This document shows, piece after piece, positions 2,483 to 20,604 of a DNA stretch of 20,604 nt. The notes under the pieces were generated by a model that was not told the origin of the DNA, did not search any database, and was given only the letters and a program-made list of their open reading frames with translations. The stretch is taken from assembly GCA_001179505.1 (NCBI GenBank), contig CDMY01000780.1, positions 1-20,604 of the forward strand. The letters run 5' to 3'. A program made the position numbers and the translations under genes. Each line of letters starts with the position of its first letter. Positions within the stretch are counted from its first letter, which is position 1. The stretch comes from Vitrella brassicaformis CCMP3155 (Eukaryota; Protista; Chromerida).

Positions 2483-5334
2483 TCAGCTCGTCTTCACCTT
2501 GCCCTCCCCGCCTCCCACCCACCCCCTGCCCCTCTCTGGCAGCATCAGCACCAGCACCACGGCAAACAGAAACGGCAAGTACACGAACCACACCACCGCC
2601 ATGCTCATGCCCTCCACACACCGATAGTCCTGAGCCATGCGATACACCGCAAACAGTGGCCGCTCGTGTGGCAAAGGGCTGGTCTGTTGAGCGACGGCCT
2701 CCCCCACTTGCCGCAGCCAGGCCAGCAGCCGTCTTGGCCCGTACTTGGCGAACTGCCGGGGCACAGAGTGCGACCAGACGGACAGCAGCAGTGAAGCCAC
2801 TGAAGCGACGCTGTGGCCGATGAGACGGATGGCCTCGTGACGGATGTGCAATACCCATTCTGCCATTGTGCTGCCGTGGGCAGCGCCATCTTCCTTTCTG
2901 TGTGACAGGTTGGCGTCGAAGAGTAGCAGCCATGTGAGCAGCAGATAGCGCAGGACGAACAGATGGCTTCGTCGCAGCCGAGGCCGCCATTTCCACCGCC
3001 ATCTGCCGCTGTGCTGCGGGGGCGATTGGGCGGTCGTCTGTTGCTGCTGTGGCGCATCGATGAGTGAGGTAAGAGGCTCCACCAGCAGGAGCGGCGGGAC
3101 CACTAATGGCGTCAAGTACACTGACGCAGCCCAGTTGTACACCTGAACAAAAGGGAAGGGGGTCGACACCAAATGAATGGATGGATGGATGGATTCGGTT
3201 TGGCTCGCTCACCGTGAGTGGTGCCAATGTGAGAATGGCCATCGCCCTCGCCACACTCTTGACGCACATCCACAGCGGCGGCATCTCACGGATGCTCGGC
3301 TGCCCTTCACCCGTCGCTTCGTTCCCCTTTGCCACGCTGTCGCCTTTGGCTGGCTGGCGTGATGATCGTGGCTGTCGAATGAGCGCCTCACTGACCAAAC
3401 AGATGAGACCGACGGCGGCGTAGCCCATCAGCGCCACCCACACCCACACAGACGCCTTCTGCAACGCACAGCACAGCACAGCACACGGTGAGTGGTGCGG
3501 TGCCGTGGAGTGCAGCCTCTCGATGCACTGGCCTTTCTGGCCATCCGCACTTGGCGTTTGTCGTGTGCAGCTGCTGGTGTGCATGAGGGGGTGAGGGGGC
3601 CTGCATGCCTCCAGCGAAGGAGGGAGGGTGCTGATGTGAGCAGACCCCCAATGCCCCAAGATGACAGCTGGTCCACAAGACCACTCTGAAGAAAAGACAA
3701 GGGCCAACCTGCAAACCGAAGTTCCCCGCTTTCTGGCTGTGTGTGACCGATCTCACCTGTGTGGCGAGTGCAAAAGACGTGAGGCTGCCTGTGATGAGGC
3801 CCGAGAGCATGACGGTGGCGCCAAGCATCACAGCTCCCACGTCACTAAACACCCTACACTGAAACGTCTGACGACCAAACCAGCACCAGACAACACAGAC
3901 AAAGCCATCCATCCATCCATCCGTCCATTGGCTGACCGCTGCGGCGAGCGGCATGAGCATGCCGAACACGGGGTAGAGGTAGAGGCCCGACGACACGTGG
4001 CTGTTGGGGCTGGTGAAGAAGTAGAAGTTGAAGGAATGGTGCAGCGCCTGCAGGGCGCTGCTCTGGCAACGCAAGATGCCCTCCAACGAGCTGCATAGAC
4101 ACGCACAGCATACACACAGAGAGAGGGAAGGGGATCAGTGCACATGGATCTTACCCGCCCAGCTGAGTGAGTTTGGGCTGGCCGTTGCCGCCCCGAGGGT
4201 TAGACGAGGCCACTGCGGTGAACGCAGGGATAGCACGCCTGACGGCAACAAGGGCAGGAAGCAAACAAGTCATTGCGTGATGATTCTAGATGCGTGTGTA
4301 TGTGGATGAAGAGCTAACTGCAGGAAGGCCGAGTGGATTCGGTCGGCCCCGGCATCGGTGGCCATTCGGTTGACGGAATCCCAGGCCTCTCTAGGCTCCG
4401 CGCGGATGCCGTCCTGCTTGGCCTCTATCGCATAGGCGTTGACCAGGTCCTGGTTCGGCTGCAGACCGTTCACACCCTCTGCACACAGACACACATACTC
4501 AAGACCCATTTAGTTGCAAATGCTGTGCGTACCGATGTCCAGTGTCACGGCGACTTGGTTGGGGCGGTGCTTGTCGATCTCGAATATGACGGCCTGGCGC
4601 ATGAGGCCCCTGCGGGGAAAGGGCGCCTTGTCACGCAGATAGCCGTCAAGGAACGCACGGACGCCTGCAGACAAACCCACACATATCCATCCATTCCTCC
4701 GCTGTGCACAGCCGTCTGCCTGTCTGTGTCTGTCTGTCTGACCTGCGGCGTAAGGCAGCGTCCGGTCGGTGAAGATCACAATGACGTCACGCGCAAGCCA
4801 CTGAACCGTCTGCAGATAGTCCGCCAGTGCGAGCCCCAGTGCGGGAGTGGCCGTGTCGTCCCTGTCACGCCAGTCCGAGGCCATGACGAGCACGATGCTC
4901 TCCCTCGAGTCGCCACGAGCAGACGGCACCACTGCCACAACTGTCGTGCCCCGCACCTCCCCATCGAAGTAGCTCCAGCTGATGTTGTAGGCTGGCAGGC
5001 CCGACCGCTCAAGAGCCGACTGCAGCTGCCCCGCCACACCACCACCACCACCACCAGCAGTAGCAGCAGCATGAGACGATGACCTTGAAGATGATATGTC
5101 AGCCGTCGCTTCTTTTAGCTCTTGCCTCATGGCGCCCAGCTGCCGGCTGCTGTGCGATGTGATGAAGCCGTGCTGTGCATAGCCCGGGACGAGGCCGTGC
5201 TCTTCGATGACTGTTGGTCTGTCGAATGCGTCGAACATGCTGAGCCAGATGGTGCCTGCGAGGGCCACCAGGAGGGAGATCTGCCACAGACGGGGCGCCA
5301 AGAAGGAGGCCACGCCGTCGCGGACAACACCCAT
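2483..5334 (-). CDS. GAA1: GPI-anchor transamidase component GAA1/GPAA1, 9 exons, 757 aa
   Basis: Exons 5334-4743, 4664-4533, 4478-4319, 4238-4155, 4090-3937, 3867-3757, 3685-3551, 3458-3213, 3142-2483; all GT-AG and phase-consistent (2274 nt). N-terminal TM followed by Gaa1 luminal motifs PSARGDSRESIVL, WLARDVIVIF, EGVNGLQPNQDLVN, HSAFLQ and LEGILRCQSSALQALHHSFNFYF, then a multi-TM C-terminus ending KVKTS*. Exon 7 is the least certain. Confidence 0.92.
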
Positions 5335-10500: not shown

Positions 10501-12118
10501 TGTAGCCGCTTGGTGGATGGTGTGTGTGGTTGGGGGGATGGGCGAGGTGGGGGAGGTCGGGGAGGCCAGTGCGGGGAGGGGCTCGGGGGCAGGCTGTGGC
10601 AGGCTGCTCGGCGGTGCTGGCTGCACACACAGATGGCCGAGGGACACGCAGAGGAATGGATGGAGAGAGAACAGGTGACTGCCCCCCTCCCTCCCTCCAA
10701 CCTGTTCGTTAACAGCCGCACCGTCCATAGCAGCAGCAGCAGCAGCATCGAGGTCCTCCCTGCTCATGAAGACCGTGTCGTCGTCGTCGGTAGCGTCGCT
10801 CCTTCTGCGGTCCTTGCCTGTCAGCGGCTGCTGCGAGGCGTCTGGTAGATTGATGTAGATGTGCTTGATTGGGATGAGGATGGCCGTCATGGTGAAGAGG
10901 AAGAACGACTGGATGCCGATCGACCACCTCCAGTTGAGGCCGGAACTCACAACCGCCTCAACCAGCACGTACCCCAGCTGTGCGTGGGACAGACAGAGAG
11001 GGAGGGAAGAGGGTGATGGGTGGCTTTTTCCTCGGCTCGGCTCTTACCGCGACACCAAACACAGCCGTCGCTTGATTCAGACCCTGCACACAGTGACAGA
11101 CAGGAAGGAAGCAGAGCAACAACTAACCCATCGGCGAACAATGAACACACACACAAACATCCCCCCACCCACCGGCCCACCTGCCACAGCGTGACCATCC
11201 TGAGCGGCGAGAACTCCTCGATCCACACAGTCGCGTAAATGATATAGCACGCCTGCGTGACGCCGATCAGGAACCGCGACGCATACAGCAGCCTCGCAGC
11301 GTCCTCCCTGGTGCCGATCTTGGCTCCCGGGCCGTCGTCGCCACCCACCCCTCCGATCCCAGACATGGCCAGCATGAGGCAGGACAGCGAGTTGAGGCCG
11401 AGGGAGATGGTCAGAATGAGCTTCTGCCGCCGATACTGCAGCAATCGGGACGCAATGAGGGAGCCGACGGCAAGGCCGAGAAAGGGAAGGGCGCCGATCC
11501 AGCCTGTTTGGTTAGGTGGTTTGGTGGAGCGGAGGGAAGAGACAGTGCGAGGCGGAAAATGAATGCGTCTGTGAGTGTGTGTGTGTGTGATGTACCTACC
11601 TTGCTCGTAACCGTCGAGTGTGAATTCTTCAGCAATCGACGGCAGCACGGCGGCGATGGCGCCGTTGTCATAGTTGACCCACAGACCTGCACCACACGCA
11701 CCAACCAGTCCACACACACACACACGAGCCACACCTGCCTGCCCACGCACCAACAGTGAAGAAGACAAGAAACACCACAAGGATGACCCTGACACACACA
11801 GACACACACACACACAGACAGACAGACAGACAGACAGACAGATACACAGACAGACATGACGTCCAGTCCTTCAGTGCCTCAGCCCCTTAAGTCCACCCGG
11901 CTCGCTCACCTTTTGTTATCCCTCGGGTGTGGTGATGAGGCCTCAGCGGCGGTAAGGGAGGCGAGGTTCGATACGGTGATCTGGAGGCTGCCCTTGTCTG
12001 TGTTGCCGTCGGAGGCCGTCGTCCGCGGCGTGTGCGTTACAGGGTGAGGCAATGAGGGCGTTTCCCACCTGCGGAAGAGGGCAGGATCACTGTCCTCCGT
12101 CGGCGGAGGCGAAGCCAT
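7568..12118 (-). CDS. Major facilitator superfamily transporter, Spinster-like, 16 exons, 1043 aa
   Basis: Exons 12118-11910, 11788-11751, 11686-11600, 11503-11181, 11083-11048, 10977-10702, 10620-10283, 10174-9877, 9770-9249, 9153-8933, 8847-8789, 8721-8503, 8410-8315, 8208-8119, 8002-7947, 7831-7568; GT-AG, phase-consistent (3132 nt). Motifs VNYDNGAIAAVLPSI, ASRFLIGVTQA, TVWIEEFSP, GIQYWAKVY, GVVLGGVLVDRLGGY, QSVPPYLRPCAASIS fit a 12-TM Spinster-like MFS. Confidence 0.9.
11791..11855. repeat. (CA)n/(ACAG)n compound microsatellite in MFS intron 1
   Basis: gacacacaca...cagacagacagacagacagacaga; representative of many intronic microsatellites in the window. Confidence 0.9.
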
Positions 12119-12255: not shown

Positions 12256-15200
12256 ATGACTGCCGAGTCGCCCGGATGGATGCACGACACATGGAGATGG
12301 CCGAGGGCGCTCGTATTGCTGCTTGCTGTGGTCGTGATGATCTGCCCGGCCGTCTCGCAGATGATGTCTGCAGAGTCATCGAGGTGAGACGAGCGAAATG
12401 AATCATATCACATCACTATGGCTAACGTGCATTTCTAATGTGTTTGTCACTGCGTGTGTGTTGTCTGTGCTGCAGGTTGTTGATAGAAGACATGTACCGC
12501 CACGCGTGGACGTCTTACGTGGAGCATGCCTTCCCTGCCGACGAACTGCAACCCGTCGCGTGAGTGAGCCATCGACAGTCAGACAGTCAGACAGACAGAC
12601 GTCCATGCGCCGCTTATTCCCTTCCCTCTCTCTCTCTGGTCAGGTGCATTCCCCGTCTGCACCGCACTCGGGGCGCGATGGACTCGATCATCGCCAATGT
12701 GTCGCTCACGGCCGTCGACGCACTCGACTCGCTGCTGGTAGCTGATGTCTTGTCTGTGCCTGTTGGCCTGGATGTATTCTTGTGTGTGTGTGTGTGTGTC
12801 AGATTTTCGGCTATGAGGATGACTTCAGGCGAGTGGTGCAGCACATCATCGCCAACGTCACATTCGATAAGGTCAGATCGGCCAAACACGACAGCAACCA
12901 TACACCCATCATCACACGGTCTGCTGTTCCTTCGTGTGTGTGTCTACGTGTGTGTGTGGGTGAAGGATTTGGAGGTGTCCACATTTGAGATGAACATTCG
13001 TGTGCTGGGTGGGCTCATATCGGGACACCTGCTGGCACTGGCATCTCCCAAGCTGCTGCCCGAGTACAAGGTCCATCCATCGCACGCACTCTCTCTCTCT
13101 CTCTGTGCACGGAATGGATGTGTGTATGTGTGAATCGCAAAGGGCGAGCTGCTGGTGTTGGCTGAAGATTTGGGTCATCGGCTGGCCAGGGCGTTCGAGT
13201 CGCCAACCGGCATCCCTTTCACACGGGTCGGTGGGTGGGGTGGGTGAGGGGGTCATGTGCATCACAAATAAGCCAGCATGTCAACGCGCAGGAGCAGACG
13301 TTAGAATTCTCTTGTCTGCTGTCCGGCACGTGTGTGATCGAGTGTGTGCAGGTGAACTTGCGTCGAGGCGTGTCGCGCAACGCCCCCCGGCGGACGTCGG
13401 TGGCCGAGGCGGGGACGTACCTGATGGAGTTCGGGATGCTCACGGCACTCACCGGCAACCAAACATTCTACGTGACCGACCGAGGGCGGGATGCACACTC
13501 ACTCACTCACTCACTCACCGACCACCCTTCCTTCCTTCCTTGATGCGTGTGCAATTCTCTCTTTGTCTTTGTGTGTGTGGATGTGTGGATGTGCAGATGT
13601 TGGCAAAGCAGTCGTCCATCGCGATATTCTACAGACGGTGGGTGTGTCAAGTCGAGACGAGGGGAAAACATCTCACTCACTCACTGGTTGTGCATTGTCA
13701 TTGTGTTGTTTGTTGTGATCTGGTCCCCCTCCCCTCCGCTCCTCTCCCCTCCCCTCGCCCAGGTCGTCGTTGGGTTTGGTGGGGAGTGTGGTTGACGTCA
13801 CCAGCGGTGCCGTCATGGACGGCACCTCCACCATCGGACCGAACTGCGACTCTTTCTACGAGTCAGTCAGTCGGGCAGACAGGCACCTGACCTACCTGCA
13901 CGTGACCTCGCCCATGCGTGTGTGTGCTGCTGCTTTGCCAGGTATTTGCTCAAAGCTTACTTTCTCTTCGATGATCGAGAGCTTTATGACATGTTCCAGC
14001 CGGTCTGGGATGGGATACACACAACCATCCAATGTCTCTCGTCATGCAGATGTCGTGTGTGAATGGTTCGTTGTCGATGTGTGTTCAGTTGGCCGAGGCC
14101 ATCGACCGGCACCACCGCTTCGAGGGTTTCTACTTCAGCACCGACGCCTACAGGGGCACGTGGCTGCACCAGCAGGTCTCGCCACTCGCCGCCTTCTGGG
14201 GAGGCACACAGGTCCCCACTCACAGACAACACGCAGCCCAACCAATCGGACACTCACCATCCATCCGTCAAGTGTGTAGTGTGTTGTGTCTACCAGGTCT
14301 CGTTGGGTGATCTGTTGGGTGCGTCGGCCACTGCCCACTACTGGTATGCCCTCTGGCGCATCCACGGGGCTCTCCCAGAAGGTAACCAACCCCTCCCTCC
14401 CTCCCCCTCTCTCCCGATTCACGTCTTGTGTTGTGTGATTCTCCCTGCACAGGGTTCGACGTGGAGTCTCTGCGCGCCCTGACCCACCTGCGGGACTCGC
14501 CCCTGCGCCCCGAGCTGTACGAGACCAACTACTACGTCTACCAGGCCACCAAGCTGCCCATACACATGACCATGGCGGAGGAGTACGCCGCCCAGATCAA
14601 CAACAGGAGCAGAGTGGCGTGCGGCTTCGCGTCGATCAAAGGTCACGTGGGGCAGAGGGGGGAGGGGCGAGGGGGGTGAGCGTATCGTGTGTTGCTTTGT
14701 GTGTGGTGTGTGGTCTGTGGTGTGTATGTTGTTGGTTGTAGATGTGAGGAAGGAGGGGTCTCATGATGAGAGGATGGACAGGTGGGGGGGTGGGTGGCCT
14801 GCATGCTTGGAGGAAACATGTGTGTGTGCGTCTGTCTCTCCGCCTGTTTATCGTTGTCCAGCTACTTCCTGAGCGAGACCCTCGTTTACCTCTACCTCAC
14901 CGTCACGCCACCAGCCGTCATCGACCAACGGGTACACACACACACACACACACAGAGGAGATGGACCAGCCTCCCTTCCCTCCCATACATGCAGCTGCCC
15001 TTCCCCCTGGCGCACACCGTCTTCACGACGGAAGGCCACCTCTTCCCCGCACCACGACTCATCCCGCACCTGCTGCCAAACGGCACCGCACGCTTCAGCA
15101 CCACCAACAGCAGCAGGGCCGACAACCACACAGACGGTGGTGGTGGTGGTGAGTATGGCCGTGGCGAGCAGCAGGTGCATCCGATGGGCTTCCACAAGTT

Positions 15201-17506
15201 CATTGTCAACCTGCCACCGGCCCTCGTCGAGACAAGACCCGTCGACAAGTCAGTCAGGAACCACACACACAGAGAAGAAAGGAATCCACACACGGAAACA
15301 AGCGTGTGTGTGCGTGTTGTATACTTAGGTGTCCGAGAGTGTCATTCCTGGACCACGAGTCATCCGCCGCCCGCAACGACGTCGTGTGGGTCCCCCGCGC
15401 GCCCACCTCCGCCCTGTCCCGCACCACGCACACCAAGTGCCACCACGAGATGGCCTTCGCGACGGTCGTCATCCGCCCTCCAGTGCCGCTGGACGGACCC
15501 AACGACTTCGCTGACGACCCCTCGTCGCCAGCCCCCTTTGCCCTTCACGTCAAGGGCACCGCCACGAGTGGCTTCACCGGCGCGGTGCCGCCCTTCCCGG
15601 TGTCACAGATGTATCACGTCAGCGGCAACCATCGCGTGTTCTGCCCGTTTTACCCCAACCCGCCACTGCGAAAAGCGAGGGAGGTGCGTGGGAGTGGGGT
15701 CGGCGACGGGGCGTGCGCGTGCCGCTGGTGCGCCTGCAATGGGGAGCAGGATGGTGGGGAGGAGGACGGGGAGGGGGAGAGCTGCCACGTCAACGAGACG
15801 CTCCCATCCCATGAACTGGTGGCTTCATGCGGCCACCGGCTGATCGACGGAGATAGGTTGGTGCTGTGGGACGGTGGTACTGGTGGAGGGTGTGTGGGGT
15901 GCTACTGCTGCCGACACGGCGGCGCGACCAGGGGCTCTGCGCGGTGCCAGTGCGAAAACGGCCTGGTGGCGCCGATGTGCCACTGCCGATGCCTCAATCG
16001 GACTGAGAGTGACGCTGACGCCATGGCGGTGTGCGGCGACACCGGCGAGATCCGCTCTGTCCCCCTCACCTCCCTCGCCCATCTGGAGGTGCCCCTGCTG
16101 CCTGGCGTGCCGTCCTTTCTGCTCGACCGACGGGGCCCGATGATGAAAGGCGGAGACCATCGATCACAGCACCACCAACACCACCACCACCACAGGCACC
16201 GACAAGAGCCATCAAGCCCAGACCAAGGGCAGGAGGAGCACGGCAGTAGCTACCGGTCGTGGATGGGCAGCCTGCAGCACCGGTTCGCCTACTGCTTCGA
16301 GCCGCCCGACGTCTTTGACTGGTTCACCTGGACCATCACCGGCACCTGGCGGCGGGACCCGCGACACAACAACCACCATGGCGATCGTGGCGACGGCTAT
16401 GATGACACCTCTCCAGTCTATTCGGCCGACGAGATCGAGGCCGTCGACTGGCGGCTGTCGGTGAGGGCGGCGCAGATGTGTCTTGCGAATGCGACCAGGG
16501 GAGGTGACGGTGGGGGGCTGTGGCGTGGGGTGAGGGTGGGGAGTGTGTCTCAGCTGCCGCCTGACCACACGCAGGGCGACGAGGGGCTGTCGATTGTCAG
16601 AGGCAGGCGCTCCATCAACACGTCAAGGTGAGTAGTGAGAAAAAGCCAGACATACCTGTGACGCCCATTGGGTATCTGTCTGTCTGTGTGCAGGCGGCGC
16701 GTGACGCCCGGCAAGGGCATGGGCGAGTTCCGTTTTGACAGCCCCAGCGAGGCGACACTTGCCTTTGGGCGGCCTGTGGTGATTGCTGACCCGTCTGAAG
16801 CATGCACGCCCCTGCAGACGACCGACGATCGGCCGTTTGCCTACCTGAACAAGGTAGGTCTGTCATACCGAGAGAGAGGGCCCTTCAATTGTGCATTGAT
16901 TGTGTCATGACTTACTTGGTGTGTGTGCACAGGTAGTGTTGATAGAGCGTGGCTCATGTCTGTTTGTCGATAAGATCAGCGCGGCGGAGGACGCCGGCGC
17001 CGCTGCTGTGCTCATTGTCAACTACCCTCACAGAAAAGGCAAGCCAGCCACGCTGCCCACACACACAACCACACAGGGAGGGCCACAGAGGGAGAGGGAG
17101 AGGGCTGGGGTTCCATCCACTGCTGTCTGTGGGCGGACGTATGTGTGTGTGCAGCTCAAGTGATGACGGGCCCCGCGGCCCAGCCGGGTGTGAGCGGCCC
17201 ACAGGTGCACATCCCCGCGATCATGATCTCTGCCGAAGATGGCGACACTATACGGTCAGCCAGGCACACAGGCACTCACAGACAGACAGACAGACAGACA
17301 GACAGAAGCTGTCCACCATCCCCCTCATTATCCCTCGTGGCCGTATGTCTGTCTGTATGTGTGTGTGCAGGGAGCTGGTGTCATCTCTTGGTGACTTCAT
17401 CTCTGTCCACCTGTATGCGCCGCCCAGGCAGACGTCACACATACTCGGGCAGCGCAGGAGGGCCGTGCGCAGACGACACGCGGCACGATCAGCAGCCAAC
17501 GCCTGA
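12256..17506 (+). CDS. EDEM: ER degradation-enhancing alpha-1,2-mannosidase-like protein (GH47 + PA domain, EDEM3-like), 21 exons, ~1148 aa
   Basis: Exons 12256-12383, 12476-12559, 12644-12737, 12803-12871, 12966-13070, 13143-13226, 13352-13471, 13597-13637, 13763-13861, 13942-14002, 14089-14211, 14297-14381, 14453-14641, 14742-14781, 14862-14931, 14995-15248, 15329-16627, 16694-16853, 16933-17038, 17155-17254, 17371-17506. Signal peptide; GH47 motifs HAFPADELQP, AVDALDSLL, STFEMNIRVLGGLISGH, DSFYEYLLK, LRPELYE, MDSYFLSETL, FTTEGH; PA motifs VLIERGSCLFVDKISAAEDAGA and IPAIMISAEDG. The last exon and the internal structure of exon 17 are less certain. Confidence 0.92.
17039..17154 (+). other. 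Non-canonical GC-AG intron in the PA domain of the EDEM-like gene
   Basis: Donor AAG|GCAAGC. Among nearby donor candidates only this phase-1 site joins YPHRK to AQVMTGP...IPAIMISAEDG; phase-0 GT sites run into CTC AAG TGA. Confidence 0.75.
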
Positions 17507-17926
17507 CGACGAGCGCAGCGTGTTGGGTCGCTGTGCTGTCTGTACGTGCTGCCGATCGGCTGTGTACCAGTATATTGAAATTCTTGCCTTCCGCTGCGTA
17601 TGAATCAGCGGCGACGCACGAAATGGTGGCGGGTGACGTGATCCCCGCTCACCCTCCCGTGATCCGGCGCTACGTGATGCGCAACAAAAGGGATGGATGG
17701 ATGGATGGATGGACGCAAGAGTGAGATACGTGTTGTGTGCGTGTGGATGTGCGTGGTGGACTGACTGAATCTCTTCAAACCGACCGACACACAGAAAGTC
17801 CGTATGTACAGTACGAACATGCTCCTTACTGCGCTGCACAGATCAGATCTGTCCAACCCATCCCCCCTCCCCCCCATGTTTCCCCTTTGCTTCTGCTGTT
17901 CTAACGGGTTGAGAACTATCACCTTG

Positions 17927-18376
17927 CTACGGCAGTATCACTCCCGACCTGTGTCTGATCTCAGCGTCCCCCACCTCCCCCACAAAGAAGTGCCGCTGCT
18001 CCAGTGCATCTACCCTGCTGCCGCTCTCCTCCATCGACACACACATCACCGGCCGCATCGCCGCGCCCTTGACGCACAGCAGCACCGCCCCGACAGCCAG
18101 AATGACGCATACGGCCAGCATGGCGTCGAGCATGACGGCGTGGTCGTTGAAGGGCCCCTGCTCGTACTTCTTGCCCTTCGGCAGCAGCGTCAGTATCAGG
18201 ATGAGCAGCCCGTTGAGCAAAAGGCCGGCGAGGAACACATGCGGCAGCTTCTCGCTGAAGGAGAAGGCCAGGCAGCAGAGCAGGCTCAGAAACACCACAA
18301 ACAGGATGACGAAGAGGCCGGTGCCGACGCCCAGCACACGCGCTGAAGCTGCAGACGCCGCCAAGAGCAACATCAT
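17927..18376 (-). CDS. TMEM218: TMEM218-like small three-TM ciliary transition-zone membrane protein, ~149 aa
   Basis: VLGVGTGLFVILFV resembles the TMEM218 N-terminal VLGVGAGVF motif; second TM ends LTLLP (LLLFP in TMEM218); a loop Asp precedes TM3 and MRPVMCVSM matches the post-TM3 xPIYxxxL position. Recognised from memory of the family, not by search. C-terminus could be spliced differently. Confidence 0.72.
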   Translation of the reverse strand: MMLLLAASAASARVLGVGTGLFVILFVVFLSLLCCLAFSFSEKLPHVFLAGLLLNGLLILILTLLPKGKKYEQGPFNDHAVMLDAMLAVCVILAVGAVLLCVKGAAMRPVMCVSMEESGSRVDALEQRHFFVGEVGDAEIRHRSGVILP

Positions 18377-18764
18377 CTTGTGAAATCCGAGACGTGCCGC
18401 GGCTGGAAAAGAAACAAAGCGGCCAGGAGATCTGCAGATCTGGCCAGCTAACCAACGATGGCACCAGAGATCTCTCCAGATTTCATCGCATTCATAGTCG
18501 TGTCGGCGGTGTCGCTCAGAATCACACACACACACACACACGCACAAGTCACGCACTAGCAGCTGCATTGGATGCCCAAATATCTCGCTGGACGCACCCA
18601 AATCCGATTCGACTCGCTGCTGTCGTGTCCAGCCCCCGCATGACATGACCCCGATCACCTCATCTATCCCATGCATCAATCATCTCATCAACCATCCGTA
18701 CCTACCGTACACGCGCGCCCTACTATCCTATCCGCCATCCATCCATTCAGCCCCACAGTTGCTG

Positions 18765-20279
18765 CTAAGGCAGGTGCAGCCTGACGTGGTACATCTTGCC
18801 CCAGTTCTTGCCCGTCACCAGCACCTCCCCTCGCCGCTCGTCCACCGTGGCGATGCCATTGAAGCTGCCGTCTGTCCGCCGCCGGTGAGGCGCCAAAGGA
18901 AGACAGGAAAAGTCCCAGAACGACAACACTCGGCCGGTCGATGGATCGATCTGTAAGATCCACTTGGTGTACCACACGTTTGCCAGCAGAGACCCGCGGA
19001 ACCACTCAAGCTCATTGATCATCCTGCAGACAGACAGCGAAAAGGAAGGGCATCAGGCCGCTTGGTCGTCTGTCCCTTCGGCCGTTAAGTCATTCCTGAG
19101 CCAAATGAACCGTGTGCTCACGTGATGGGTTTGCTGTCTTTGTCTCGGACATTGATGGACTTGACGACGCGAGCGGGCCGGCCTTGGTCGTTTCCATGGA
19201 CGAGAGAGGAGTCCCAGAAGTCGAGCTGGCTGGAGCCGTCAGACACAATCAGGTGACGACTGTCGGTCGTGATGCCCCAACCTACACACACTCATGGATA
19301 GAGAAACAGACGGCTGGCAGGCAGGCAGGCAGGCACATCGATGCACCTCCCCCTTCCCCTCCCCGCCAATGTTGCTCACCCTCGCCTGTGGTCGTTTCGA
19401 AGGAGATCTTGTGGAGAGGCCTCAGCTCTTTGTCCCAGACGATCGCCTGCTGCTCCTTCCACGTCAGCTGCACCAACCTATCTCCCACAGCACAAATGCC
19501 CTCGCCGAAGTAACGCGGTGGCAAACGCCGCTCCATCACTTCTGGGCCCAATAACGATTCTGAAGGCCGGTCGTCGTCGATAACGGCGACGGACCTCCTG
19601 CCGCTTTCGGAGCTCGAGAGGGGTATAGGGGCGGTGTGGTGGTTTTGGTCACCAGCCAGAGAGACCGATGGCCGGAGAGCCGACAGGATGTTCATCCAGC
19701 TGGTGGGCCGCATCTCTGATGGTGAGGGGAGAGGCCCGGCTGGCGCATCTTTGGTGAGCCTCCGGGCAGTGATACGGCTCCTTCCCCACATACCTACGCA
19801 CACACCGAGGCACAGACAAGACGACTGAATGAGTGAATGAAGGCCCCCCACCCCACCCGTTGTTGTGTGTGGACCGGACCTGTGCTCTCGTAGAGCTTCC
19901 CGTCGAGCGTACACAGCCCCTGGGTGAAGTCCCTGGGGTTGTGCTCACACACGCCCAACACCTCAAAGCCACACGGCTCCGGCAGGTGCACCTCATCCAC
20001 GTCACCGTCCACCGTCTCCATACTCCTCACTCGAGGCCTCTCTTGGGTGGCGGCCTTCGCAGACATCACAGAAAGGAGCGGCAACGCAGCAAGGGGCACA
20101 AAGTGGCGCCGCGGGACGGTGCGGCGCGGTCCGCCTTGGGTGCGGGGAAGGGAGAACAGGCGCTTGGGGTAGTGAGAGGCGCATCGGTCGGTGGAGAGGC
20201 GGATGAAGGAGAGGGCAACTGACGGCACTCTGAATGCATGCAGCAAAGCTGGTAGAGCCAGCATGTGGGCGACAAACAT
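18765..20279 (-). CDS. QC: Glutaminyl-peptide cyclotransferase, plant/bacterial (type II, beta-propeller) family, 4 exons, 410 aa
   Basis: Exons 20279-19880, 19793-19380, 19281-19122, 19023-18765; GT-AG, phase-consistent (1233 nt). Family motifs FTQGL, LYESTG, YFGEGI, QLTW, EGWGIT, SDGS, INELE, ANVW, FNGIA, TGKNW all present. The start could extend upstream via an intron at about 20307-20378. Confidence 0.93.
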
Positions 20280-20604
20280 CAAGCTGACAGACGGATGCAC
20301 GTGCCTGCACACACAGACAGAGCGTAGATCAGATGTTCAGATCTGATGTGCAGATCTGAGCGGATCTTTCGTTCACCTTTGAAGGACGGTGCAGCAGGTG
20401 CATGGATAGATCATCCAAAGGGCATTTCGCGCGTGTGAGAATGGAGCTGCCTAAGCTCGCGCAGGGGAGCGGTTTCACAGAATGTCCTAAGCGGCCTGAC
20501 GGCCAAGTCCCATGTCTTTCACGCACAGTCTGTGCGAAAAGGCCGGTGAGGACCTTTCCTGTAGTCAGCTGAATAGAGGATCTGCTGGGCGGTAAGTCCC
20601 AGAG

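What the first reader, a model, noticed from the sequence alone, without database searches (positions are those of the whole stretch)
20052..20279. Type II glutaminyl cyclase with an apparent three-part (ER + plastid + thylakoid-lumen Tat) leader
Seen: the 76-aa leader reads MFVAHMLALPALLHA|FRVPSVALSFIRLSTDRCASHYPKRLFSLPRTQGGPRRTVP-RRHFV-PLAALPLLSVMSAKA|ATQ. That is a short hydrophobic segment, Phe at the predicted +1, an Arg/Ser-rich and acid-poor stretch, then RRxF(V), a hydrophobic helix and an AxA site. Established: complex red-derived plastids use a signal peptide plus a Phe-initiated transit peptide; thylakoid-lumen Tat substrates add RR-hydrophobic-AxA; characterised type II QCs act in secretory or periplasmic compartments. 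Inference: N-terminal pyroglutamate formation may occur in the thylakoid lumen of this alga, on lumenal proteins that expose Gln/Glu after thylakoid processing peptidase cleavage. I do not know of this pathway being described.
Basis: partly seen in the sequence, partly recalled or inferred. Interest (0 to 1): 0.75.

Follow-up and report, generated by a model that had tools for sequence, protein, structure and literature searches.

The report
Algal glutaminyl cyclase with three-part leader
An expressed gene of the alga Vitrella brassicaformis encodes an ordinary plant/bacterial-type glutaminyl cyclase behind an unusual three-part address label that may send it into the thylakoid lumen, where no such enzyme is known, but this rests on sequence features of one species only.

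Summary
The quoted 76-aa leader is real, on the minus strand. The gene is Vitrella brassicaformis CEM33233.1, which is annotated as 5'-partial. Spliced transcript contigs from two studies confirm all exons. They also show one more 5' intron and an in-frame ATG 21 codons upstream, so the leader is probably 97 aa. The first hydrophobic segment is kept and gains a basic n-region.

The enzyme is a type I (five-bladed beta-propeller) cyclase, not type II. Pfam PF05096 matches, predicted-model TM-scores to the four solved type I cyclases are 0.79-0.90, and all family-invariant residues are present.

Among 243 homologues only Vitrella has two hydrophobic segments separated by a basic, acid-poor spacer. 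The layout fits a signal peptide, Phe at +1, a transit peptide and an RR-hydrophobic-AxA lumen signal.

Support is limited:
- No close orthologue exists.
- Diatom and Plasmodium relatives carry a recessed signal anchor where Vitrella has its second segment.
- Tat-signal HMMs do not match.
- TatA and TatB were not found in chromerids.
- RR arises by chance about 16% of the time.

I put thylakoid-lumen targeting at about 0.45 and a secretory/Golgi route at about 0.3.

The parts
20377..20492 (-). 5' exon, transcribed. Its 5' end is unknown because contigs break in a repeat. It holds a 4-codon uORF (ATG 20425, whose stop overlaps the next ATG) and the first in-frame ATG.
   Evidence: Spliced contigs in X8 (to 20492) and X1 (64 nt past the joint). 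ORF analysis.
20412..20414 (-). Upstream in-frame ATG.
   Evidence: an in-frame stop lies upstream in the same exon.
20305..20376 (-).
   Evidence: Joint 20303/20376 in X1 and X8 (two studies).
20235..20288 (-). First hydrophobic segment, like the h- and c-regions of a signal peptide, ending L-H-A.
   Evidence: KD13 2.05 and KD19 1.85, typical of signal peptides in this family (median 1.82). AF2 helix at P0160 residues 8-23.
20232..20234 (-). Phe at the predicted +1 after signal-peptide cleavage.
   Evidence: The Phe motif is documented in chromerids but is weaker in Vitrella (PMC6668581).
20112..20234 (-). Spacer like a transit peptide: Arg/Ser/Pro-rich, one acidic residue. One search gives net charge +8 over residues 37-78 of the 431-aa form.
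20052..20111 (-). Third part: R-R-H-F-V, a 13-residue hydrophobic core with two Pro, then A-K-A. It resembles a thylakoid-transfer (Tat-like) signal.
   Evidence: No match to Tat-signal HMMs.
19880..20304 (-). Coding exon 1: leader, acidic linker and first propeller strands.
19380..19793 (-). Coding exon 2. Holds the YFGEG motif, with the Glu codon at 19501-19503.
19558..19755 (-). Lineage-specific insert of about 65 residues, predicted disordered and retained in the mRNA.
   Evidence: No joint inside exon 2. pLDDT below 50 at P0160 residues 171-209 and 213-218.
19122..19281 (-). Coding exon 3.
18765..19023 (-). Coding exon 4, including the stop codon. The 3' UTR runs to about 18475.

Best explanation
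The minus strand carries an expressed Vitrella brassicaformis gene for a catalytically intact type I (five-bladed beta-propeller) glutaminyl cyclase. It has a multi-part N-terminal leader of 97 aa from ATG 20414, or 76 aa from ATG 20279.

Shown:
- the gene structure, its expression and the extra 5' exon;
- the fold and the conserved family residues;
- the anatomy of the leader and its uniqueness within the family.

Inferred route:
1. The first hydrophobic segment acts as an ER signal peptide and is cut after L-H-A.
2. The exposed Phe and the basic, acid-poor spacer carry the protein across the inner plastid membranes.
3. The third part (RR-H-F-V, a short hydrophobic core, A-K-A) exports it into the thylakoid lumen. 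Tat is more likely than Sec. The thylakoid processing peptidase then cuts after A-K-A, 26 residues ahead of the fold.
4. In the lumen the enzyme would cyclise N-terminal Gln or Glu of lumenal proteins.

The third part probably descends from the recessed signal anchor that diatom and Plasmodium cyclases carry at the same position. An upstream signal peptide would then have turned a basic cytosolic tail plus anchor into a transit peptide plus lumen signal.
For: - Gene model and 5' exon.
- Type I cyclase: Pfam PF05096 at 1.9e-59; PDB 3MBR, 3NOL, 3NOK and 2FAW by sequence and by fold, TM 0.79-0.90; all 18 invariant columns kept.
- Fold boundary: the fold starts at P0160 residue ~111, downstream of A-K-A.
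- Uniqueness: only Vitrella among 243 homologues has two hydrophobic segments with a basic spacer.
- No alternative start: there is no Met between the two segments, so no isoform can begin at the second one.
- Charge pattern: spacer net +8 with one acidic residue, and the region after A-K-A is net -4.
- Second segment is weaker than anchors: KD19 1.47 and an uncharged run of 16, against 2.31 and 21.5.
- Chance estimates: AxA 2.7%, Phe 3.2%.
- Literature: Phe after the signal peptide is documented for chromerid plastid proteins, and TatC, SecA and SecY are present (PMC6668581). Tripartite lumen leaders are accepted in diatoms and cryptophytes (PMC3774753; PMC9951199).
Against: - No SignalP, ASAFind or TatP run was possible, so segment calls rest on hydropathy and rules.
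- There is no close orthologue, so there is no conservation test.
- Diatom relatives and Plasmodium QC (TM at residues 42-57, PMC9436314) have a recessed anchor where Vitrella has its second segment, often preceded by RR.
- A loose RR-x-hydrophobic-hydrophobic pattern beside the hydrophobic segment occurs in 16 of 198 homologues, and RR arises by chance at 16%.
- TIGR and Pfam Tat-signal HMMs give no hit.
- TatA and TatB were not found in chromerids.
- The Phe motif is weaker in Vitrella.
- No paper reports a plastid or lumenal cyclase.
Confidence: 0.45

Rival explanations
1. Secretory, ER or Golgi enzyme, as in its relatives. Either the second hydrophobic segment is the family's recessed signal anchor or signal peptide and the basic stretch before it is a cytosolic tail, or the first segment opens the ER and the protein simply stays in the endomembrane system.
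For: - About 43 homologues, diatoms among those identified, have a single hydrophobic segment starting 30-75 residues in, behind a tail.
- Plasmodium type I QC has a TM at residues 42-57 (PMC9436314).
- Colponema has a plain signal peptide.
- The tree places Vitrella inside the eukaryotic group, SH-aLRT 86.
- RR before the anchor is common there.
Against: - The second segment is shorter and less hydrophobic than 91% of those anchors and contains two Pro.
- The N-terminal segment is as hydrophobic as typical signal peptides and always precedes it in the mRNA.
- Relatives' tails are of mixed charge or acidic, not acid-poor and Arg-rich.
- Phe sits exactly after a small-x-small site.
Confidence: 0.3
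2. Plastid-targeted but not a soluble lumenal Tat passenger. The third part would be a Sec-type signal, or an uncleaved tether holding the enzyme on a thylakoid or envelope membrane.
For: - The first two parts are the same as in the main reading.
- SecA and SecY are plastid-encoded, while TatA and TatB were not found.
- Tat HMMs are silent.
- RR is plausible by chance at 16%.
Against: - RR-x-F-V plus a Lys in the c-region and a weakly hydrophobic, Pro/Ser-containing core are Tat-like features (established knowledge of Tat signals).
- A-K-A is a good processing site.
- A 16-residue uncharged run is short for a stable tether.
Confidence: 0.12
3. Mitochondrial intermembrane-space protein. The basic N-terminal region would be a matrix-targeting presequence, followed by a hydrophobic sorting signal cut by the inner-membrane peptidase, in the style of cytochrome b2 or c1.
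For: The Arg-rich, acid-poor stretch followed by basic residues, a hydrophobic core and a small-x-small site has the same grammar as bipartite IMS presequences (established knowledge). A mitochondrial cyclase isoform is reported in Drosophila (PMC7948796).
Against: The first 36 residues of the long form hold one Arg and a 16-20-residue hydrophobic run, which looks like a signal peptide rather than an amphipathic presequence. The Phe after a cleavage-type site fits the plastid route.
Confidence: 0.06
4. Gene-model artefact: the leader is untranslated or intronic sequence read in frame.
For: The public model is marked partial.
Against: Transcript contigs from two studies contain the whole leader in frame with the enzyme, with no intron inside it. 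The frame is closed by a stop just upstream of ATG 20414.
Confidence: 0.02

Closest known systems
Type I glutaminyl cyclases (papaya QC 2FAW/2IWA; Xanthomonas 3MBR; Zymomonas 3NOL; Myxococcus 3NOK; Plasmodium QC)
   Same: Pfam PF05096, five-bladed propeller fold, invariant FTQG / YFGEG / GWG / NELE / TGK positions, and an extracytoplasmic destination implied by an N-terminal hydrophobic signal.
   Different: Has a disordered insert of about 65 residues in the propeller. Has a two-segment leader with a basic spacer, where bacteria and Colponema have one signal peptide and diatoms and Plasmodium have one recessed anchor.
Tripartite thylakoid-lumen leaders of algae with red complex plastids (diatom lumenal proteins; cryptophyte phycoerythrin alpha subunits)
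   Same: Same order of parts: ER signal peptide, aromatic +1 with a basic transit peptide, then a hydrophobic lumen signal ending AxA. Cryptophyte alpha subunits use RR, which I state from my own knowledge of Gould et al. 2007.
   Different: The passenger is a protein-modifying enzyme with no known plastid role. Function of the leader is not shown here.
Bacteroidetes Q-rule system (membrane-associated cyclase acting on signal-peptidase-I products; PMC5837995, PMC10653852)
   Same: A cyclase placed in the compartment where a type I signal peptidase creates new N-termini. The thylakoid lumen is topologically equivalent to the periplasm.
   Different: Whether Vitrella lumenal proteins begin with Gln or Glu is unknown. 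The organisms are unrelated, and some Bacteroidetes use the type II enzyme.
Ochrophyte cyclase homologues with a signal peptide followed by Phe (Nannochloropsis/Microchloropsis P0279, P0251; Tribonema P0021)
   Same: A eukaryotic type I cyclase whose signal peptide is followed directly by Phe and, in the eustigmatophytes, by a Ser-rich, acid-poor stretch. This suggests plastid import of cyclases may not be limited to Vitrella.
   Different: They have no second hydrophobic segment, so they would not be lumenal by this logic. They were not run through a predictor.

Membership tests
Type I glutaminyl cyclase (PF05096, beta-propeller) | Profile match above the curated cut-off | tested here: met
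   P0160 scores 201.5 bits against a cut-off of 22.3, and every exon piece matches.
Type I glutaminyl cyclase (PF05096, beta-propeller) | Five-bladed propeller fold like the solved enzymes | tested here: met
   The AF2 core has pLDDT above 90. The Foldseek top six hits are all type I cyclase chains, TM 0.79-0.90 normalised by target.
Type I glutaminyl cyclase (PF05096, beta-propeller) | Conserved active-site residues, including the Glu of YFGEG | tested here: met
   All 18 invariant columns of a 54-sequence alignment are present, including F237, E239, W281, N348 and K405 of P0160. Mapping these to papaya residue numbers is from memory.
Type I glutaminyl cyclase (PF05096, beta-propeller) | Cyclase activity | not testable with these tools
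   Needs a recombinant enzyme assay.
Type II glutaminyl cyclase (animal, zinc, alpha/beta-hydrolase fold) | M28-like alpha/beta fold with Zn ligands | tested here: not met
   PF05096 is the only Pfam match, the model is all-beta, and the nomenclature is given in PMC7948796.
Bipartite leader of red complex plastids | N-terminal ER signal peptide | tested here: inconclusive
   Hydropathy and the -3/-1 rule fit, but no trained predictor was available.
Bipartite leader of red complex plastids | Aromatic residue (Phe) at +1 of the signal-peptide cleavage site | tested here: met
   L-H-A|F. This depends on the predicted site, and the motif is weaker in Vitrella.
Bipartite leader of red complex plastids | Transit peptide with net positive charge and few acidic residues | tested here: met
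   42 residues: 8 Arg, 1 Lys, 1 Asp, 0 Glu.
Thylakoid Tat signal | Twin Arg directly before the hydrophobic core, then two hydrophobic residues after one spacer residue | tested here: met
   R-R-H-F-V. Chance is about 16% for RR nearby.
Thylakoid Tat signal | Moderately hydrophobic core, basic residue in the c-region, AxA site | tested here: met
   13-residue core with KD13 2.15 and KD19 1.47, then A-K-A.
Thylakoid Tat signal | Match to Tat-signal profile models | tested here: not met
   No hit in NCBIfam or Pfam at E up to 10. These models are bacterial and demand a stricter consensus.
Thylakoid Tat signal | Tat machinery present in the organism | tested here: inconclusive
   From the literature only: TatC is present (Vbra_12257), and TatA and TatB are not listed (PMC6668581 supplement).
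Type II signal anchor, as in diatom and Plasmodium cyclases | One hydrophobic span of about 19 or more uncharged residues behind a cytosolic tail | tested here: not met
   The uncharged run is 16 with two Pro, and KD19 of 1.47 is at or below all but 9% of relatives' anchors. A second hydrophobic segment lies N-terminal to it.

The most novel reading that the evidence does not exclude
Vitrella places a glutaminyl cyclase in the thylakoid lumen, giving lumenal proteins pyroglutamate N-termini after thylakoid-peptidase cleavage. This would be a plastid counterpart of the Bacteroidetes Q-rule. The route would have been created simply by adding an ER signal peptide in front of the basic tail and recessed signal anchor of an ancestral Golgi-type cyclase.
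Probability: 0.35. Interest if true: 0.7.

Novelty: new variant of a known kind. Interest (0 to 1): 0.45.

Why it matters
No cyclase is known in any plastid, and enzymatic N-terminal pyroglutamate formation has not been described for thylakoid-lumen proteins (paper searches). If the leader works as it reads, three things follow. It would add a new protein-maturation step to the lumen. It would give a concrete example of how a secretory type II membrane protein can be re-addressed to the innermost plastid compartment by one N-terminal addition. It would also make a testable prediction, that Gln or Glu is enriched at the mature N-termini of Vitrella lumenal proteins. If it does not, this is an ordinary secretory cyclase with an odd N-terminal tail.

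Tried and rejected
- Plus-strand reading gives stops only.
- I looked for an intron hidden in exon 2 to explain the insert. The transcripts show none.
- Tat-signal HMMs in NCBIfam and Pfam on the leader gave no hit.
- Orthologue leader comparison failed. The word search with P0160 and the exhaustive search with P0001 gave nothing closer than about 45-48% identity, and no Chromera protein could be recognised because the hits carry no taxonomy. Contig look-ups for P0080 and P0015 named no organism.
- On the origin of the enzyme, FastTree placed Vitrella next to short bacterial sequences. The site-heterogeneous IQ-TREE run moved it into the eukaryotic group, unresolved, so I treat the first placement as long-branch attraction and claim no donor.
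- I could not obtain Vitrella's real lumenal proteins (Vbra_7099, 12477, 15129, 1771, 15278, 6554) by reference, so that comparison was left out.
- Notes on this genome returned titles only and no checks.
- Rfam and repeat scans of the contig end found nothing.

Full report
**Observation**

The stretch 20052-20279 translates to nonsense with stops on the plus strand. I built a four-exon coding model with GT..AG introns: 20279-19880, 19793-19380, 19281-19122 and 19023-18765.

Contigs from public runs laid on 17600-20604 (3,005 letters) confirm it. Runs X1, X2 and X8 carry spliced contigs with exactly these three joints. X3 carries one unspliced genomic contig. There is no joint inside exon 2, so an insert of about 65 residues relative to other cyclases is part of the mRNA.

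**The true 5' end**

The same contigs show a fourth joint that removes 20305-20376 (72 nt, GT..AG). Upstream of it lies an exon reaching at least 20492, seen in two studies.

In the spliced mRNA the enzyme's frame is open back to an ATG at 20414 and closed by a stop just upstream. This adds 21 residues, giving 431 aa against 410 aa from ATG 20279. A four-codon uORF (ATG 20425) ends in an ATGA overlap with that start. An out-of-frame ATG (20403) opens a 109-codon ORF. All starts have weak contexts.

No Met lies between the two hydrophobic segments, so every isoform carries both. The public protein, CEM33233.1 of Vitrella brassicaformis CCMP3155 (P0160, 418 aa, 'partial', contig length 20604), begins exactly at the 20304 acceptor.

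**What the enzyme is**

- P0160 matches Pfam PF05096 at 1.9e-59.
- It matches the solved cyclases of Xanthomonas, Zymomonas, Myxococcus and papaya by sequence.
- An AlphaFold model built on a 54-sequence alignment has pLDDT above 90 over residues ~111-415, apart from the disordered insert.
- Its six best PDB matches are those same cyclases, with TM 0.79-0.90 normalised by target.
- All 18 invariant alignment columns are kept, including the Glu of YFGEG at 19501-19503.

In the literature the propeller enzymes of plants, bacteria and parasites are type I, and the zinc alpha/beta enzymes of animals are type II (PMC7948796; PMC9436314).

**Anatomy of the leader**

Numbering follows the 431-aa form.

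| Residues | Content | Charge |
|---|---|---|
| 1-36 | One Arg, then a hydrophobic run ending L-H-A (KD19 1.85; family signal-peptide median 1.82) | net +1 |
| 37 | Phe | – |
| 37-78 | 8 Arg, 1 Lys, 1 Asp, no Glu | net +8 |
| 77-97 (overlaps the spacer by two residues) | P-R-R-H-F-V, a 13-residue hydrophobic core with two Pro, then A-K-A | net +3 |
| Next 26 | Acidic linker; the fold begins right after it | net -4 |

**How unusual it is**

I collected 243 homologues containing the FTQG motif and scanned their N-terminal extensions.

- 211 have one hydrophobic segment.
- Only the Vitrella protein has two segments separated by a basic spacer.
- Shuffling the local composition gives AxA right after the core in 2.7% of trials, small-x-small in 12.5%, and RR within six residues before the core in 16%. 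Phe makes up 3.2% of the protein.
- A loose RR-x-hydrophobic-hydrophobic pattern beside the hydrophobic segment occurs in 16 of 198 homologues.

The overall build is therefore far from chance, but the RR alone is weak evidence.

**Relatives**

The relatives that could be identified are as follows.

- The best-scoring hits after self include diatom proteins (Grammatophora, Astrosyne, Proboscia). Many are tandem two-domain proteins, with a tail of 30-75 residues followed by a 19-27-residue anchor.
- Plasmodium type I cyclase is described with an N-terminal TM at residues 42-57 (PMC9436314).
- The plastid-less alveolate Colponema has a plain signal peptide.
- Nannochloropsis/Microchloropsis and Tribonema homologues have a signal peptide followed directly by Phe. 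In the eustigmatophytes a Ser-rich, acid-poor stretch follows. None has a second hydrophobic segment.
- A site-heterogeneous tree puts Vitrella inside the eukaryotic group (SH-aLRT 86), unresolved. A FastTree run had put it beside bacteria, which I regard as long-branch attraction.

**Weighing the readings**

For the plastid-lumen route:
- The first segment looks like a normal signal peptide and is always translated first.
- Phe follows a cleavage-type site, and chromerid plastid proteins show this Phe, though less strictly in Vitrella (PMC6668581).
- The spacer has transit-peptide composition.
- The second segment is weaker than 91% of relatives' late anchors and ends in A-K-A.
- TatC, SecA and SecY are present in chromerids.
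- Tripartite leaders are the accepted form for lumenal proteins in complex plastids.

Against it:
- The position of the second segment matches the recessed anchor of the diatom relatives and Plasmodium, so it may simply be that anchor.
- Tat-signal HMMs do not match.
- TatA and TatB were not found in chromerids.
- No predictor, orthologue or localisation data are available.

A mitochondrial intermembrane-space presequence has the same grammar and cannot be excluded.

My estimates:

| Reading | Probability |
|---|---|
| Plastid and lumen (Tat more likely than Sec) | 0.45 |
| Secretory / Golgi | 0.30 |
| Plastid but not a soluble lumenal passenger | 0.12 |
| Mitochondrial intermembrane space | 0.06 |
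| Gene-model artefact | 0.02 |

A simple evolutionary path fits the data. This is inference. An upstream signal peptide added to a type II cyclase turns its basic tail into a transit peptide and its anchor into a lumen signal.

**Novelty**

The paper searches found no report of a cyclase in a plastid or of enzymatic pyroglutamate formation in the thylakoid lumen. The enzyme family and the leader type are both known, and only their combination would be new. The nearest functional analogue is the Bacteroidetes Q-rule, in which a cyclase modifies N-termini made by signal peptidase I.

None has been followed up. This may mean the pattern is common in Vitrella, or that it is over-called in an Arg/Ala-rich proteome.

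**Surroundings**

Other ORFs in the window match an MFS transporter, the Gaa1 GPI-transamidase subunit and, weakly, GH47. None has a functional link to the cyclase. The last ~140 bases of the contig are a very high-copy repeat with no Rfam match.

Noticed in passing
window 20464-20604: The contig ends in short stretches (about 20464-20529 and 20537-20596) with depth 50 to 1000 times the local level, in both the genomic run X3 and the transcript runs. Many different continuations leave them. This is an unexplained high-copy repeat. It breaks the transcript contigs and hides the transcription start. It has no Rfam match.
   Followed up: partly
window 19558-19755 (minus strand): An insert of about 65 residues, rich in Pro, Ser and Arg, lies between two propeller strands. 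It is retained in the mRNA, predicted disordered, and was absent from the bacterial and papaya enzymes compared.
   Followed up: partly
window 20403-20425 (minus strand): A four-codon uORF has a stop that overlaps the first in-frame ATG (ATGA). An out-of-frame ATG at 20403 opens a 109-codon ORF across the leader. Both could affect start-codon choice between the 431-aa and 410-aa forms.
   Followed up: no
P0279, P0251, P0187 (Nannochloropsis/Microchloropsis), P0021 (Tribonema minus): These ochrophyte cyclase homologues have a signal peptide followed directly by Phe (A-V-A|F-A-A-G and G-W-S|F-A-V-P). In the eustigmatophytes a Ser-rich, acid-poor stretch follows. They are possible plastid-targeted cyclases without a lumen signal.
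   Followed up: partly
P0011 and P0013 have them behind a type II signal anchor and long acidic linkers. In P0013 the two domains are each other's closest relatives in the tree.
   Followed up: no
window 18765-20492; public protein CEM33233.1: The deposited model is 5'-partial. The transcript contigs allow it to be completed to 431 aa with an extra 5' exon.
   Followed up: yes
window 4513-5334 (-), 10950-11813 (-), 14782-15840 (+): Neighbouring ORF pieces match Gaa1 (GPI transamidase), an MFS transporter and, weakly, glycoside hydrolase 47. Their gene models were not built.
   Followed up: no
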